A stretch of DNA of 64,000 bases, from contig NW_025964223.1 of assembly GCF_023055435.1 (NCBI RefSeq), positions 55,614,001 to 55,678,000 of the forward strand, read 5' to 3'. Below are positions 9,384-45,623 of this stretch, piece after piece. Numbering within the stretch: the first letter of the stretch is position 1; every line of letters begins with the position of its first letter. Below the pieces are notes generated by a model. It saw only the letters and a program-made list of their open reading frames with translations. It had not been told where the DNA came from and ran no database searches. Source of the DNA: Haliotis rufescens. Lineage: Eukaryota. The position numbers were made by a program, and so were the translations under genes.

Positions 9384-12108
9384 ATGAAAGGTCTGAGCAG
9401 CTGTCTGCCCATGTGTCTGTGTCTTGCTGTCTGTCTGCAGATTATCTGCGGGGAAGATACCCAGCAAGTTGACACGCCTCTGTCCCGACAAAAGAGGTTT
9501 GACTTTGACTTTGACAAAATATTAAAGGGTTTGAAGACGGCAGGCACCTTCGTAAAGACGGCCACCAACCTTCTTGGCCAAGGGAATTCAACGTTTGGAA
9601 GATTTATTAATAGGCTCCCCTTCTTGGATCTGCCAGATGCCAAAAGCATTTTAGGCCGATTTGATGACATGATGAAGAAAGAGGCCATGACGCCAGTTCA
9701 GATGGACCTCGCCCACCAGTTGATGGACGCCCTTAATCATACAATCTCGCTAAAGGAGCAGTTCGAGGAAAGTAGCGGTACGTTATTAACGAGAACACTC
9801 ACTTTCGTTACAGCGGACACGTCTATAGGGGCATTAAAATGCTGCTGGGATGTGGTTCTGGTGTATGGGGGAAGTCATTATGCTGAAGTGGACTGATCGC
9901 TAGCCCAGTAGGTATAGCTTGTGCCGAAGTGTCCGGCTCGATTCGATAGATACATGTACATGCCACTTCCAATGTGGTATTGCTGGCATATTGTATAGGC
10001 CATTCTCACTCAAATACAACTTACGTGGGAGGACACATGGTCGGCAACCCTATCTCAGTTTAACAGTTTCTCGTCTCATGAATGACAACTAGTAGTTATT
10101 TTTCTCGTACAATTTACTTTCAAGTACAGATTAAAGTACATTGAATGCGACTGTAAGTTTAAGATAAAATAATTGGTACTTGTCTGGTTGGACTTCATGC
10201 AAAACTATTTTTAAGTACAAAGCAATTATGTTTTACACACCGAATCAGTAGTTTAAACCCGGATACTCTCAGAGCAACCGTCTCTGATAGTTGAAGTCTA
10301 AAAGGCAATAGGTTCAAGTGAGAAAGAAGCTGGTGAGCGAACGCTAACCACATGGCCACATCCCCGACTGACACAAAGACGTTTATTGATGTCACAGGTG
10401 ATCGTGGATGACCCAGTGCAAAGTTGCGCCCCTTAGATATATATGTAGGGATCGTATGGTTATAGTCAGTAACGTAGCTGATATTGTATCCTTAAATTGC
10501 TCATGTCATCACCCACTAGATCGACTGATCCTGTCACGAGTACTTACAAGCTTCCGTGATAGGTGAAAGGTTGCGGCGAAGGCGTGAACACACTCAGTTG
10601 CTGTAAACCAGGAAGAAAACCATTTGTATTGATGGGGCGGTGGGGTAGTCTAGTGGTTAAAGCGTTTGCTCGTCACGCCGAAGACCCGGGTTCGATTCTC
10701 AACATGGGTACAAATTGTGAAGCCCATTTCTGGGCCCACTTGCACAAAGCGATCTTAGCGCTAAGAAGGTCGTAACTCCCATACTTTAACATAGGCTTAC
10801 GATAGTCTTAGCGCTAAGATCGCTTTGTGCAAGTGGACCCTGGTGTCATCCGCCGTGATATTGCTGGAATATTGCTAAAAGCGGCGTAAAGCCACACTTA
10901 CTCACTCACTTCTGTTGATTACAGAACATTGTTCTTGTACCTCAGGGGGCACGGGTGGCCCAGTCGTCCAAGGCGCCGCGATTCGCTGTGCAGAGTTGCG
11001 TCCCTTGGGCACGCCAGAAACCTATGATTGTGGGTTCGAATCCCGGTTCGCCCCGATTATGTTTAAAGGTTTGTCAGCACCATACCCGTGCTCGTGGGTT
11101 TCATCGAAGTGGTAAACGTCTGAGACCTGCATCACTTCGGGCTTTCCTCCCACACGCCGTGATTTAACTGGAATATTGTTCAAAGCGGCGTTAAACCCAA
11201 CTCACTCACTCATTCACATTCTTGTACCTCAACATGTTCTTGACCATGTCGTATTATTCCATTTCCTGTTCTTGTAAATGCAACAGTACTCTTCTTGTTC
11301 AGTTTCTGCTCCTGTTCTATTTTGTTCTTGTTGACCTCCTGATTCAAGAGCCTGTTTCCCCGCTGTCTTTCTTGTTTACTTTCACACTGTTCTTGGTCTC
11401 TTTCCTGCTCTTGTTCTTGACCTTGATCTTTTTGTTTCTGATTCTGTTGTACCTCCTCTCGCTCTAAGTCGTAGACTACATGCTATTTGTATATATTTGT
11501 TTATCGTCTTCAGGTCAGAAACAATTCGATTTGGTCAGTCTGTTGGCGGGACTAAGGACTGCCGGCACTGTGACAAAGACCATCACCAACGTCCTCGGCT
11601 TCAGAAACTCCGCTTTCGGAAGGTTCGTCAACCAGGTGCCTTTCTTGGACGTACCTGATGCCAAGAACGTCCTTGAACATGTGGAGAACATGATGAAGAC
11701 AGAAAAGATGTCAGAGGTCAAGATGGACCACGCCCATCAGCTGATGGAGGCTCTGGAATACTCCATCCAGATGAAGGAACAACTAGGAGAGGGCAGTGGT
11801 AAGTTCTCTTTCAACCAGGTGTAACTTAAATATTGTCCAAGAAGGAGTTAAACCCACTCAGGAGTAATTGATTGGCCTAAAGAGATTATCGAACTTTGTT
11901 GTCTATAGGAACTTTTGGTTAGAAAGTAGTCTTGCAGTCAGAGAGTTAAATTACGCAGCAAGCTTTAAATGAATATCTGCTGATGAGTTTACTATTTGTT
12001 TAAATAAATTCGTGCATGGGTTTGTGTGTTTCAGGTTCGTCAACATTGCTGCAGACATCGACCTTGATGATGCTGCCGGTCATGTGTGCAGTGAAATTTA
12101 CCATATAA
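9384..12108 (+). CDS. Gene A, join(9384..9777,11514..11798,12035..12108), 250-aa precursor: signal peptide, RQKR site, two helical domains, GPI-signal-like tail
   Basis: Acceptor tttcag at 9373, then MKGLSSCLPMCLCLAVCLQIICG...LSRQKR|FDFDFDKILKGLKT. Phase-1 donors at 9778 (GTACGT) and 11799 (GTAAGT); acceptors at 11513 and 12034. Last exon GSSTLLQTSTLMMLPVMCAVKFTI*. Total 753 nt in frame; AATAAA at 12284. Confidence 0.85.
10633..10910 (+). mobile_element. SINE family 2 interrupted by a MITE
   Basis: Family-2 head and tail flank the insertion at 10733-10839. Confidence 0.85.
10733..10839. mobile_element. 107-bp MITE, PIF/Harbinger-like
   Basis: ~34-bp TIR ggcccacttgcacaaagcgatcttagcgctaaga and 3-bp TSD CTG (10730-10732/10840-10842) in the SINE target ttctggtgtc. 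Confidence 0.85.
10945..11218 (+). mobile_element. SINE family 1, full length
   Basis: 13-bp TSD TTCTTGTACCTCA (10932-10944/11219-11231). Confidence 0.92.
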
Positions 12109-12539
12109 ATGTGTGGACAAGCATGTTGCCGGGGACTAATTGCTCATGATCAAATTCTCTTTGAGTTGCGTCCCCTCATCTGTGCCAGGATCGGCTTGTC
12201 GATTCACGGAAGAGCTCCTATTATTATCCTCGCCACCATATCTTATAGTAATCGTCTCGGTGTCCGCGCTCTGATATAATTGAAATAAAACTATTTCTCA
12301 AACGTTGTACTTGTTTAATTCACTATATCACAACTGCCACAGGGTGTGCTGGGGGCAGTGTCGACCCTCACTGTGAGCGCTAGCCCAGTGCCTGGCCTCT
12401 GCGTGTGTACGCTCTCTACTAGTGAATGAGTAGGTGAGTGTTCTTTAACACCCTAGTCAGCAATAGTCCAACTGTACCTTTAAGTAACCGTGCGTGCGTG
12501 TGTGCGTGCTTGCGTGCGTGCGTGCGTGCGTGCGTGTTT

Positions 12540-12742
12540 TGTACCTTGGGTGCGCCAGAAACCTATGATCTTGGATTCGCCCAACTTGTTTCTAGGTTTG
12601 TCAGCACCACACCCGTGCTCGTGGGTTTTACCGAGGTGGTAAACGCCTGAAACCTGCACAAACAACACCGGGTTTCCTCCCACGTTAAGATGACACATTT
12701 AGCGGCGCTGTAAGTGACGTTTAACCCAACTCACTCACTCAC
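12540..12742 (+). mobile_element. SINE family 1, 5'-truncated
   Basis: ccttgggtgcgccagaaacctatgat...ttcctcccac...aactcactcactca. Confidence 0.8.
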
Positions 12743-12780
12743 ACGTCGTAGGGGTAAGACTACACTCCGTCAACCAAAAG

Positions 12781-44065: not shown

Positions 44066-44530
44066 TGGGGGCACGGGTGGCCCAGTCGTCAAAGGCCCCG
44101 TTGTATCCTTTAGTCTTTCCATGAATCTATTTTCGTGGGGTCGAATCCCAGATTTGCTATGAGTATGGTCATTGGTTTGTCGGCACCATACTCGTACTCA
44201 TCGGTTTCTCCAAAGTGTTAGATGTCTGAGACCTGCATCACTCAGGGTTTCCTTTCACCCTAAAATGCACCCATGAAGATCCATGCTTGCCGTAAAAGGC
44301 GCCTATGCTTGTAGTAAGAGGCGACTAACGGGATCGGGGGGTCAGGCTCGCTGACTTTGGTGATACATGTCATCGTATCCGAATTGCGTAGATCGATGCT
44401 CATGATGTCAATCACTGGATTGTCTGGCCCAGGCTCGATTATTTACAGACCGCCGTCATATAGCTGGAATATTGCTGAGTGCGATGTTAAACATACAAAC
44501 ACTTTAAGATGACACACCTAGATATAACTG
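44066..44530 (+). mobile_element. Degenerate SINE family 1 with a family 3 copy inserted (~44270-44500)
   Basis: Family-1 head at 44066, then the family-3 body, then the family-1 tail gacac..gatataactg. Confidence 0.75.
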
Positions 44531-44829
44531 AAGTCTGGTTAATTTTCGTGTCATCGTACCCCGGCGGCATCTAACATTGCTCATAGTATCAGCCACTGGT
44601 TTGTGCGGTCCAAACTTGCAAATCTACAGACCTAATGATGCAGTTTGCATATTAATGATTGCGGGGTTAAACAACATTCACTCACTCGCTCAGAGTACGT
44701 ATTCCGAATGTGTACAGAAGCTCCCAGCACTAATAGTCTGGATGACAGATTTTTTTCGGAGTAACGGGGTCCAGATTACCGAGGTTACATGGGACAGATA
44801 AAAAATTCGAATCCTTCTTCTTCAGAAAC

Positions 44830-45623
44830 ATGCGGTCTTCCATTATCCTTCTGTGGCTCGTTGTACTGGTCTGTGTGAACACCCAGGACATCCAAGACAG
44901 CCAGGACACCCAAAACACCAAACTGTCACGTTCTAGGCGGTCTGTGAAGGAGATCGTGGAGGGTTTGAAGACTGGATTTAGCAGACATCTGTCTTCCGTT
45001 TTCACTCTGGCAAAGGATAAGTTTAAGGAAGTCCTCTCCGCTCTTGGAAAACTTAAGCTAGCTGTAGCCAAAGGGATCCTGAAAAAGTTCATTGGCTTGA
45101 AAGACAAGCAGCATGATTTCGGCGATGCAGAAAGTGCCCAGAGAGTGGCCAAAATGATGGAGGTTCTGGAGGAAGATATCGAACGGCAGGAGAATGGTAA
45201 GAGTACTTCAGAAATAAACAAATTAATTTTCGTTCGTGCGTCCGTTTGTTCGTTCGCTCTTTATTCATTCATTCATTCATTCATTCATTCATTCATATAT
45301 TGATTTATCAACTTACTGATTGATAAACCAGTTATTCGAAAGCCATTAACCATCAAACTTTCGGCTCAAGATCACTTGACATTAATCAGTAGTAATGACA
45401 TTATCAATGGCATGGATTAATTACACTAAGCAAGGCAAAATATACTGATTACATCGTATAAACATGTGGTATCCCTGAAATTGGACTTTGAAAAGACCCG
45501 CTACCATACATTGTGAAGTTATAATTGATGAATACATGTTCTGTTTCAGGAGCGTCAGCTTCATACGTCACCGTGACGTCCTTGACGATTCCTCTTCTAG
45601 CAATTGTGACGCTGAGGTTCTAA
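44830..45623 (+). CDS. Gene E, join(44830..45196,45550..45623), 146-aa precursor: signal peptide, RSRR site, one cationic helical domain, GPI-signal-like tail
   Basis: ttcag|aaacATG; MRSSIILLWLVVLVCVNT..LSRSRR|SVKEIVEGLKTG; donor 45197; last exon GASASYVTVTSLTIPLLAIVTLRF*; 441 nt in frame. Confidence 0.9.

What the first reader, a model, noticed from the sequence alone, without database searches (positions are those of the whole stretch)
9498..45196. Unrecognised ~90-aa all-alpha domain shared by two divergent subfamilies (A/B and C/D/E), nine copies in total
Manual alignment of A (DFDKILKGLKTAGTFVKTATNLLGQGNSTFGRFINRLPFLDLPDAKSILGRFDDMMKK..AHQLMDALNHTISLKE) with E (SVKEIVEGLKTG-FSRHLSSVFTLAKDKFKEVLSALGKLKLAVAKGILKKFIGLKDK..VAKMMEVLEEDIERQE) keeps I..GLKT, F, L..L.L..AK.IL..F and M..L...I...E with helical periodicity. 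There are no conserved cysteines. Inference: a 4-5 helix bundle whose size and amphipathy recall disulfide-free saposin-like membrane-lytic folds such as AS-48 or lacticin Q, with an acidic last helix that might mask the cationic ones.
Basis: partly seen in the sequence, partly recalled or inferred. Interest (0 to 1): 0.8.

Follow-up and report, generated by a model that had tools for sequence, protein, structure and literature searches.

The report
Abalone-only helical surface-protein gene family
The nine copies are real and related: they form five neighbouring red-abalone genes for secreted proteins built from one to three copies of an undescribed ~90-residue five-helix domain. Each gene ends in a signal typical of lipid (GPI) anchoring to the cell surface, so these are probably not free membrane-lytic peptides.

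Summary
The window (Haliotis rufescens) contains exactly nine copies of an 85-94 aa, Cys-free, all-alpha domain.

**Homology.** The A/B/copy-3 and C/D/E subfamilies are homologous: hhalign E 2e-6, score 36.5, against 10.5 +/- 2.1 for 300 shuffles. They share the gene structure, and a third subfamily about 90 kb upstream bridges them.

**Gene models.**
- The nine copies belong to five genes.
- A and B are exons of one gene; spliced contigs from four studies show this.
- C carries three domains, D two, E one and copy 3 one.
- Copy 3 has a frameshift in its signal peptide.

**Fold and relatives.**
- AlphaFold gives a confident five-helix bundle (pLDDT 90-91).
- No Pfam, PDB-sequence or convincing PDB-fold match was found.
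- Relatives appear only in Haliotis.

Every gene has a phase-1 intron after a Gly. A small last exon then encodes S/A/T-rich residues and a 12-18 aa hydrophobic C-terminus. With the N-terminal signal peptide, this is the classic GPI-attachment precursor layout.

**Lytic reading.** The saposin/AS-48-like idea is not supported. The domains are mostly acidic, multi-domain proteins lack internal cleavage sites, and no saposin-like structural match appears.

**Verdict.** A real, lineage-restricted, unnamed domain family, probably GPI-anchored. Its function is unknown.

The parts
9373..9777 (+). Gene AB, first coding exon. ATG at 9384. Signal peptide about 9384-9452. The propeptide ends in RQKR, and domain A is 9498-9776. 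The exon ends in phase 1 (G|GT).
   Evidence: ORF. Contigs of four runs start the exon at 9373, with a spliced 5' UTR ahead of it, and join 9777 to 11514.
11514..11798 (+). Gene AB, symmetric phase 1-1 cassette exon of 285 nt encoding domain B (11516-11797). The cleavage site has decayed from QKR to QKQ.
   Evidence: Joints 9777|11514 and 11798|12035, GT..AG, in four runs from four studies. The H. rubra orthologue P0004 reads ...NSGQKQFD... across the same junction.
12035..12108 (+). Gene AB, last coding exon. It encodes (G)SSTLLQTSTLMMLPVMCAVKFTI plus the stop, a GPI-type C-terminal signal. The 3' UTR runs to at least 12306.
   Evidence: It matches the tail of H. rubra P0004.
19376..19752 (+). 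Copy-3 gene, first coding exon. Domain is 19470-19751. The ATG at 19376 is out of frame with the signal peptide and domain, so there is an apparent frameshift after MKGQ. This is either a pseudogene or an assembly indel.
   Evidence: Translation. The intact H. cracherodii orthologue P0006 starts MKGQLVCLYLAIFLHVIIA.
20345..20415 (+). Copy-3 gene, tail exon. It encodes (G)ATASTLPMTSLMLSVIYAVVSI plus the stop.
   Evidence: It is identical in register to the P0006 C-terminus.
27090..28056 (+). Gene C (LOC124127180), first coding exon. It holds the signal peptide, a propeptide ending RHRRVR, and three tandem domains with a 97-aa period (27213-27473, 27501-27764, 27792-28055).
   Evidence: The NCBI model P0012 (347 aa) has the expected length.
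28427..28503 (+). Gene C, tail exon. It encodes (G)APAAYVTMTSLTIPLLPVIAKVLN plus the stop.
35226..35892 (+). Gene D (LOC124127171), first coding exon. It holds the signal peptide, RHRRVR, and two tandem domains (35340-35600, 35628-35891).
   Evidence: The NCBI model is P0011, 247 aa.
36517..36593 (+). Gene D, tail exon. Same peptide as in gene C.
44830..45196 (+). Gene E (LOC124125550), first coding exon. It holds the signal peptide, RSRR, and one domain (44941-45195).
45550..45623 (+). Gene E, tail exon. It encodes (G)ASASYVTVTSLTIPLLAIVTLRF plus the stop.
   Evidence: The NCBI protein P0001 ends ...ERQENGASASYVTVTSLTIPLLAIVTLRF.
12781..12908 (.). Assembly gap, intergenic (downstream of gene AB).
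19794..19936 (.). Assembly gap inside the intron of the copy-3 gene.

Best explanation
This is a tandem, Haliotis-restricted gene family: five genes in the window and two more about 90 kb upstream.

Each precursor has four parts:
- an N-terminal signal peptide;
- a short Thr/Asp/Gln-rich propeptide, usually ending in a furin-type R-x-[KR]-R site;
- one to three copies of a new ~90-aa, Cys-free five-helix-bundle domain;
- after a phase-1 intron at a Gly codon, a separate last exon encoding a small-residue stretch (S/G/A/N) followed by a 12-18-residue hydrophobic C-terminus with nothing after it.

Most likely mechanism (inferred):
1. The protein enters the ER.
2. GPI transamidase replaces the C-terminal peptide with a GPI anchor at the N/S/G site.
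3. A proprotein convertase trims the propeptide exactly at helix 1.
4. One to three helical bundles are displayed on the outer leaflet of the plasma membrane as a single chain.

Domain number grew in two ways. In AB, a symmetric 1-1 exon was duplicated. In C and D, a 291-nt unit was duplicated within the exon. Each time the internal cleavage site was lost.

Shown here: the domain, its homology, the gene models, splicing and expression of AB, purifying selection, and the restriction to Haliotis. Inferred: GPI anchoring, convertase cleavage and cell-surface function.
For: Species and NCBI models:
- E exon 1 is 100% identical to H. rufescens LOC124125550. The annotated protein joins exon 1 to the tail exon as modelled here.
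- The lengths and C-termini of P0012 (gene C) and P0011 (gene D) agree with the models.

Splicing and expression:
- The A->B->tail splicing, with GT..AG introns, is seen in contigs of four runs from four studies.
- No intron-less copy exists in the genome.

Tail exons:
- All five tail exons use a TTTCAG|G phase-1 acceptor.
- Each encodes 22-24 residues ending in a hydrophobic stretch.
- The same tails occur in the H. rubra, H. asinina and H. cracherodii orthologues and in the distant paralogue P0009.

Homology:
- hhalign gives E 2e-6 to 3e-6 between all three subfamilies. Shuffle and neighbour-gene controls score 10-21.

Fold:
- Five helices, pLDDT 91 and 90, pTM 0.78 and 0.80.
- Both models return the same top structural neighbours.

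Selection:
- dN/dS between paralogous domains is 0.04-0.52.

Distribution:
- An HMM search of 1.84 billion representatives gave seven hits. Five are from Haliotis, one is of unknown source, and one is an mTERF false positive.
- The profile word search gave Haliotis proteins plus P0007, a protein of unknown source.
- The whole genome holds 11 domains, all within about 141 kb.
Against: - GPI anchoring is inferred from sequence rules only; no GPI predictor or experiment was available.
- The tails of C and D contain two Pro and a Lys, and the AB tail has a Lys near the end. These are weaker hydrophobic stretches than in textbook signals.
- The dibasic site is missing in copy 3 and in the H. rubra and H. 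asinina E orthologues, so propeptide removal is not universal.
- Tissue and cell type of expression are unknown because run metadata were coded.
- The runs were labelled 'RNA?' (a guess).
- Both AlphaFold alignments contained both subfamilies, so the two models are not independent.
Confidence: 0.7

Rival explanations
1. These are soluble secreted helical proteins. The hydrophobic C-terminus would be a removable C-terminal propeptide or sorting signal, or a weak membrane tether. The mature bundles would act in an extracellular fluid or matrix (mucus, haemolymph, shell matrix), for example as lipid- or ligand-binding bundles in the manner of exchangeable apolipoproteins.
For: Signal peptide, convertase site and amphipathic five-helix bundle. 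The C/D tails are only moderately hydrophobic, mean KD about 1.3 over 22 residues. AB contigs show high word depth in some runs, as expected for an abundant secreted product.
Against: A hydrophobic stretch at the extreme C-terminus, preceded by small residues, is kept in every family member and orthologue despite 20-25% domain identity. It is encoded by a dedicated conserved exon, which fits a GPI signal better than a dispensable propeptide.
Confidence: 0.2
2. Furin cleavage releases a disulfide-free, saposin-like / AS-48-like membrane-lytic (antimicrobial) domain whose acidic last helix masks cationic helices.
For: A dibasic site lies directly before helix 1 in AB, C, D and E. The N-terminal half of the E domain is Lys-rich and E has pI 8.9. 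The helices are amphipathic.
Against: - No saposin, NK-lysin or AS-48 chain appears among the top 50 of 48,161 chains for either model.
- Foldseek gives nothing below E 0.76.
- Eight of nine domains are acidic to neutral.
- Internal repeats lack cleavage sites.
- The C-terminal anchor signal is present.
- Cleavage sites are lost in some orthologues.
Confidence: 0.05
3. The ORFs are non-functional: chance ORFs, repeat-derived sequence or decaying pseudogenes.
For: Copy 3 has a frameshift between its ATG and its signal peptide. The region is rich in SINE-like repeats.
Against: dN/dS is 0.04-0.5. Spliced transcripts of AB are seen. Orthologues with the same architecture are conserved in four Haliotis species. 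The fold prediction is confident.
Confidence: 0.02

Closest known systems
Generic GPI-anchored protein precursors (signal peptide plus a C-terminal omega-site and hydrophobic-tail signal; rules of Eisenhaber/big-PI type, from general knowledge)
   Same: N-terminal signal peptide. Small residues (N/S/G, then G/A/S) about 22-24 residues from the C-terminus. A polar spacer, then a 12-18-residue hydrophobic end with no cytoplasmic residues.
   Different: The displayed domain is unrelated to any known GPI-anchored family (Ly6/uPAR, GFR-alpha, prion and others). Anchoring is not experimentally shown.
Abalone sperm lysin and sp18 (Haliotis acrosomal five-helix-bundle proteins; from general knowledge)
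   Same: Haliotis-restricted, secreted, Cys-free helical bundles. Orthologues diverge strongly between species: E is 65-69% identical between H. rufescens and H. rubra / H. asinina.
   Different: No sequence match to any PDB chain, lysin and sp18 entries included. They are absent from the top structural hits. Lysin is larger and strongly cationic and has no C-terminal anchor signal. The gene structure differs.
Saposin-like proteins, AS-48 and lacticin Q
   Same: Small all-alpha domain of 4-5 amphipathic helices.
   Different: No structural match. There is neither the SAPLIP disulfide pattern nor a circular backbone. The domain is mostly acidic, multi-domain and probably anchored.
Dynein linker subdomain and UTP12/13/15 C-terminal helical bundles (best structural neighbours)

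Membership tests
Any Pfam-A family | Score above the family's gathering threshold on a single domain | tested here: not met
   Single-domain proteins gave no hits, or hits of E 0.03 or weaker. The sub-threshold hits on C, D and P0004 are sums over the internal repeats. One, HEAT_SCC3-SA, reaches 29.5 bits against a cut-off of 25 only by adding three repeats.
Saposin-like (SAPLIP) / AS-48-type lytic folds | Saposin-fold topology detectable by structure comparison | tested here: not met
Saposin-like (SAPLIP) / AS-48-type lytic folds | Three conserved disulfides (SAPLIP), or strong net positive charge (AS-48, lacticin Q) | tested here: not met
   0-1 Cys per domain. pI is 4.8-7.0 in eight of nine domains.
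GPI-anchored protein precursor | Cleavable N-terminal signal peptide | tested here: met
   By inspection, a basic n-region and a 12-15-residue hydrophobic core are present in AB, C, D, E and the orthologues. No predictor was run. Copy 3 is out of frame.
GPI-anchored protein precursor | Small omega / omega+2 residues, a polar spacer, then a hydrophobic stretch running to the C-terminus | tested here: met
   For example E has ...EN-G-A-SASYVTVTS-LTIPLLAIVTLRF. All 5 genes and 8 related proteins fit. This was judged by rule of thumb only.
GPI-anchored protein precursor | Lipid anchor demonstrated (PI-PLC release, ethanolamine-linked C-terminus) | not testable with these tools
   This needs an experiment.
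Proprotein-convertase (furin-type) substrates | R-x-[KR]-R directly before the mature N-terminus | tested here: met
   Present as RQKR (AB), RRVR (C, D), RSRR (E), and KR in P0009, L011 and P0007. Absent in copy 3, in the internal repeats, and in the H. rubra and H. asinina E orthologues.
EF-hand shell-matrix protein SMP5 (PMC10741955) | Canonical EF-hand loops / Pfam EF-hand above threshold | tested here: not met
   EF-hand_8 scores 16.8 bits against a cut-off of 28 on gene C. The motif positions given in the paper fit an EF-hand loop, not these proteins.

The most novel reading that the evidence does not exclude
A fold-level orphan: a five-helix domain that arose within the abalone lineage and has no sequence or convincing structural counterpart. 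It is displayed on a GPI anchor and diversifies by domain and gene duplication. It might serve species-specific recognition (gamete, larval settlement or immune), in the way lysin/VERL does.
Probability: 0.15. Interest if true: 0.65.

Novelty: new variant of a known kind. Interest (0 to 1): 0.4.

Why it matters
It defines an unnamed protein domain and corrects the gene models. AB is one gene, and every member carries an overlooked anchor exon. This turns a set of 'uncharacterized LOC' entries into a coherent, testable family of probable cell-surface proteins.

It is also a clean small example of two routes to domain multiplication in one family: duplication of a symmetric exon, and duplication within an exon. 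A lineage-restricted, highly expressed surface family in abalone is a reasonable candidate for species-specific recognition or defence. No function is shown, and lineage-specific secreted families are common in molluscs, so the interest is moderate.

Tried and rejected
- **Tail exon of AB.** A hydrophobicity scan first placed it at 12189.
- **DNA comparison of regions downstream of A, B and copy 3.** It found only interspersed repeats.
- **Word search with A exon 1.** No hit. The tool's length window probably explains this: the H. rubra orthologue of AB (P0004) is 347 aa, above the 229-aa limit for this 131-aa query, and a two-domain H. rufescens AB protein would also exceed it.
- **P0008.** This 828-aa Physella protein scored E 1.4e-8. 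It is an mTERF repeat protein (Pfam 3.7e-11), a summed false positive.
- **Hdh-SMP5.** This shell-matrix protein has a 685-bp cDNA, the same length as the contig of P0007. Its reported motif positions fit a true EF-hand and do not fit P0007 or E-type proteins, so it is unrelated.
- **Genes F and G in the window.** They show no detectable homology to the domain.
- **ESM Atlas.** It could not read the window sequence, and P0009 gave only a 0.78 chance-level hit.
- **Paper searches.** Searches for the LOC ids and for Haliotis GPI-anchored families found nothing relevant.
- **Spliced proteins.** They were never typed or searched as joined sequences; all searches were made exon by exon or with database proteins.
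Full report
**What the window is.** E exon 1 is 100% identical to 'uncharacterized protein LOC124125550 [Haliotis rufescens]', so the window comes from red abalone. It lies at 55,614,001-55,678,000 of one 63-Mb chromosome record.

**Observation.**
- Mechanical ORF listing shows six long + strand ORFs carrying the described sequences.
- I fixed the domain limits from the translations: A 9498-9776, B 11516-11797, copy 3 19470-19751, C 27213-27473 / 27501-27764 / 27792-28055, D 35340-35600 / 35628-35891, E 44941-45195.
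- An HMM built from the family finds exactly these nine in a six-frame translation of the window. The next best hit has E 0.38.
- Eight copies have no cysteine and copy 3 has one.

**Assembly gaps, tested first.**
- Gap 12781-12908 lies after the last exon of gene AB. The stop ends at 12108 and contigs reach 12306.
- Gap 19794-19936 lies inside the intron of the copy-3 gene, between the exon end at 19752 and the tail exon at 20345.
- No domain or frame spans a gap.
- I cannot exclude an exon hidden in the second gap. However, the H. cracherodii orthologue P0006 joins the two exons directly.
- No attempt was made to fill the gaps.

**Are the two subfamilies related?**
- A single-sequence comparison of A with E is not significant (BLASTP E 0.31). 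Single-sequence genome searches do not cross between subfamilies.
- Profile against profile (A/B/3 versus C/D/E), hhalign gives Prob 89%, E 2.2e-6 and score 36.5.
- Controls scored far lower:

| Control | hhalign score |
|---|---|
| 300 column-shuffled profiles | mean 10.5, sd 2.1, max 21.2 |
| Reversed profile | 11.8 |
| Neighbouring secreted gene F | 10.7 |
| Neighbouring secreted gene G | 14.0 |

- A third, more distant subfamily lies about 96 and 87 kb upstream. It comprises LOC124125590 (= P0009), its H. rubra orthologue P0014, and a paralogue held as locus L011. It matches both subfamilies at E about 3e-6. It carries motifs of both: KSAG and SLPSLD as in A/B, and DK..SA.AQR as in C/D/E.
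- Homology is further supported by identical gene architecture, described below.

**Gene models.**
- Every first coding exon ends in phase 1 at a Gly codon followed by GTxxGT.
- Downstream, a small exon behind a TTTCAG acceptor completes the Gly. It then encodes 22-24 residues and a stop:

| Gene | Tail exon (first base to end of stop) |
|---|---|
| AB | 12035-12108 |
| Copy 3 | 20345-20415 |
| C | 28427-28503 |
| D | 36517-36593 |
| E | 45550-45623 |

- NCBI's proteins for E (P0001), C (P0012, 347 aa) and D (P0011, 247 aa) end exactly in these peptides.
- For A and B I used the single reads call. Contigs of four runs from four studies join 9777 to 11514 and 11798 to 12035, each with GT..AG. 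They also splice a 5' UTR exon onto 9373.
- The runs are only guessed to be RNA. But the genome has no intron-less copy of A or B, so the joined form must be transcript.
- Hence A and B are two exons of one gene. B is a symmetric 285-nt phase 1-1 cassette.
- The H. rubra orthologue P0004 has three such domains (A-B-B') and the same tail.
- The nine copies therefore make five genes: AB (2 domains), copy 3 (1), C (3), D (2) and E (1).
- Joined (spliced) protein sequences were never typed or searched. All searches were made exon by exon or with database proteins.

**Copy 3.**
- Its ATG (19376) gives MKGQ. The signal peptide and domain then continue in another frame.
- The H. cracherodii orthologue is intact: MKGQLVCLYLAIFLHVIIA....
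- In this assembly copy 3 is either a young pseudogene or carries an indel error. I could not check this with reads.

**Precursor anatomy.**
- Each gene starts with a typical signal peptide, for example MQSSIALLCLVVLVCVHS.
- A Thr/Asp/Gln-rich propeptide follows. In AB, C, D and E a furin-type site (RQKR, RHRRVR, RSRR) lies directly before helix 1.
- The distant members also have KR there.
- The site is absent in three places: copy 3, the H. rubra and H. asinina E orthologues, and every internal repeat (LSRP in C/D, QKQ in B).
- Multi-domain proteins should therefore stay in one chain.
- The C-terminal exon encodes small residues followed by a hydrophobic end with nothing after it:

| Protein | C-terminal sequence |
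|---|---|
| E | ..EN-G-ASASYVTVTS-LTIPLLAIVTLRF |
| AB | ..GS-G-SSTLLQTST-LMMLPVMCAVKFTI |
| Copy 3 | ..DN-G-ATASTLPMTS-LMLSVIYAVVSI |
| P0009 | ..AN-G-STRVYQSS-LIASILSTILAVFLSL |

- A signal peptide plus such a C-terminus is, by established knowledge of GPI-attachment signals, the standard layout of a GPI-anchored precursor. The defining features are small omega and omega+2 residues, a polar spacer, and a hydrophobic tail too short for a stable transmembrane helix.
- This is an inference. No predictor or experiment was available.

**Fold.**
- AlphaFold2 on the E domain (9-sequence alignment) gives pLDDT 91.0 and pTM 0.78. Helices are at 2-11, 13-21, 25-35, 40-55 and 63-84.
- On the A domain (13 sequences) it gives pLDDT 90.1 and pTM 0.80, with helices at the equivalent places.
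- Foldseek against the PDB finds nothing better than E 0.76.
- No saposin-like or AS-48-type chain is listed.
- A profile search of all PDB sequences has a best E of 0.15. Pfam gives nothing credible.

**Distribution.**
- A full HMMER scan of 1.84 billion representatives returned seven proteins:
  - five Haliotis proteins from H. rubra, H. cracherodii and H. rufescens (the H. asinina orthologue P0003 came from the word search);
  - one mTERF false positive.
- A profile word search added only the H. rubra orthologue of P0009.
- Within H. rufescens, a profile scan of the whole 1.33-Gb assembly finds 11 domains, all within about 141 kb.
- On present data the family is restricted to abalone.

**Selection and age.**
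- The C and D repeats differ at dS 0.04-0.12 with dN/dS 0.04-0.52.
- E versus C, and A or B versus copy 3, give dN/dS 0.16-0.29 with saturated dS.
- The domains are under purifying selection, and the C/D amplification is recent.
- Orthologue divergence is high for E (65-69% identity to H. rubra and H. asinina). It is lower for P0009 (86% to H. rubra).
- Without orthologue DNA I cannot say whether positive selection acts.

**Interpretation.**
- The best-supported reading is a family of GPI-anchored cell-surface proteins displaying one to three five-helix bundles (confidence about 0.7).
- The main rival (0.2) is a soluble secreted bundle whose hydrophobic C-terminus is removed or only loosely tethers it.
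  - the structure test;
  - the charge test, pI 4.8-7.0 for eight of nine domains;
  - the uncleaved multi-domain architecture;
  - the presence of the anchor exon.
- Function beyond surface display is unknown.

**Literature.**
- Searches for the gene ids and for abalone GPI-anchored or lineage-specific secreted families found no description of this family.
- The EF-hand shell protein Hdh-SMP5 (PMC10741955) was examined because of weak EF-hand Pfam hits and a coincidental 685-bp length. It was rejected.

**Earlier notes of this scan.** Notes on this window had already proposed the B cassette duplication and the C/D intra-exon amplification. Both agree with what I tested here.

**Verdict.** This is a real, unnamed, lineage-restricted domain family with corrected gene models and a probable GPI anchor. 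It is moderately interesting. The membrane-lytic interpretation is not supported.

Noticed in passing
window 19376-19420: The copy-3 gene has an apparent frameshift. The ATG gives MKGQ, and the signal peptide and domain then continue in another frame. The H. cracherodii orthologue (P0006) is intact. This is either a pseudogene or an assembly indel.
   Followed up: partly
G000:C445:55517706-55519668 (L010, L012) and 55527130-55527486 (L011), about 96 and 87 kb upstream of the window: Two further, divergent family genes with the same layout of signal peptide, KR site, domain and phase-1 Gly donor; a tail exon was found only for the first (LOC124125590/P0009, locus L012) and none within the DNA held for the second (L011). 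They bridge the two subfamilies in profile comparisons.
   Followed up: yes
window 11514-11798 versus H. rubra P0004: The AB orthologue in H. rubra has three domains (A-B-B'). H. rufescens transcripts have two. The cassette exon number therefore varies between species.
   Followed up: partly
They show no detectable homology to the domain (hhalign scores 10.7 and 14.0). The region may be a wider cluster of anchored secreted proteins.
   Followed up: partly
window 39396-41144: A long minisatellite with a 42-nt period that reads as TPPYTRACTITVTC-like 14-aa units. It is open in several frames on both strands, which suggests repeat DNA rather than a gene.
   Followed up: no
window 10590-11290, 12576-12740 and many other places: SINE-like interspersed repeats lie between the genes. 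In the laid contigs they reach word depths of 1e4-5e5, so they are abundant in the transcript-like assemblies.
   Followed up: no
window 44743-44829 / P0001: NCBI's model of gene E carries a 29-aa N-terminal extension from an upstream exon. The orthologues, and the signal-peptide logic, start at the Met at 44830.
   Followed up: no
window 330-1272 (+) and 29314-29832 (-): ORFs that look like fragments of transposable-element proteins. They were not examined.
   Followed up: no
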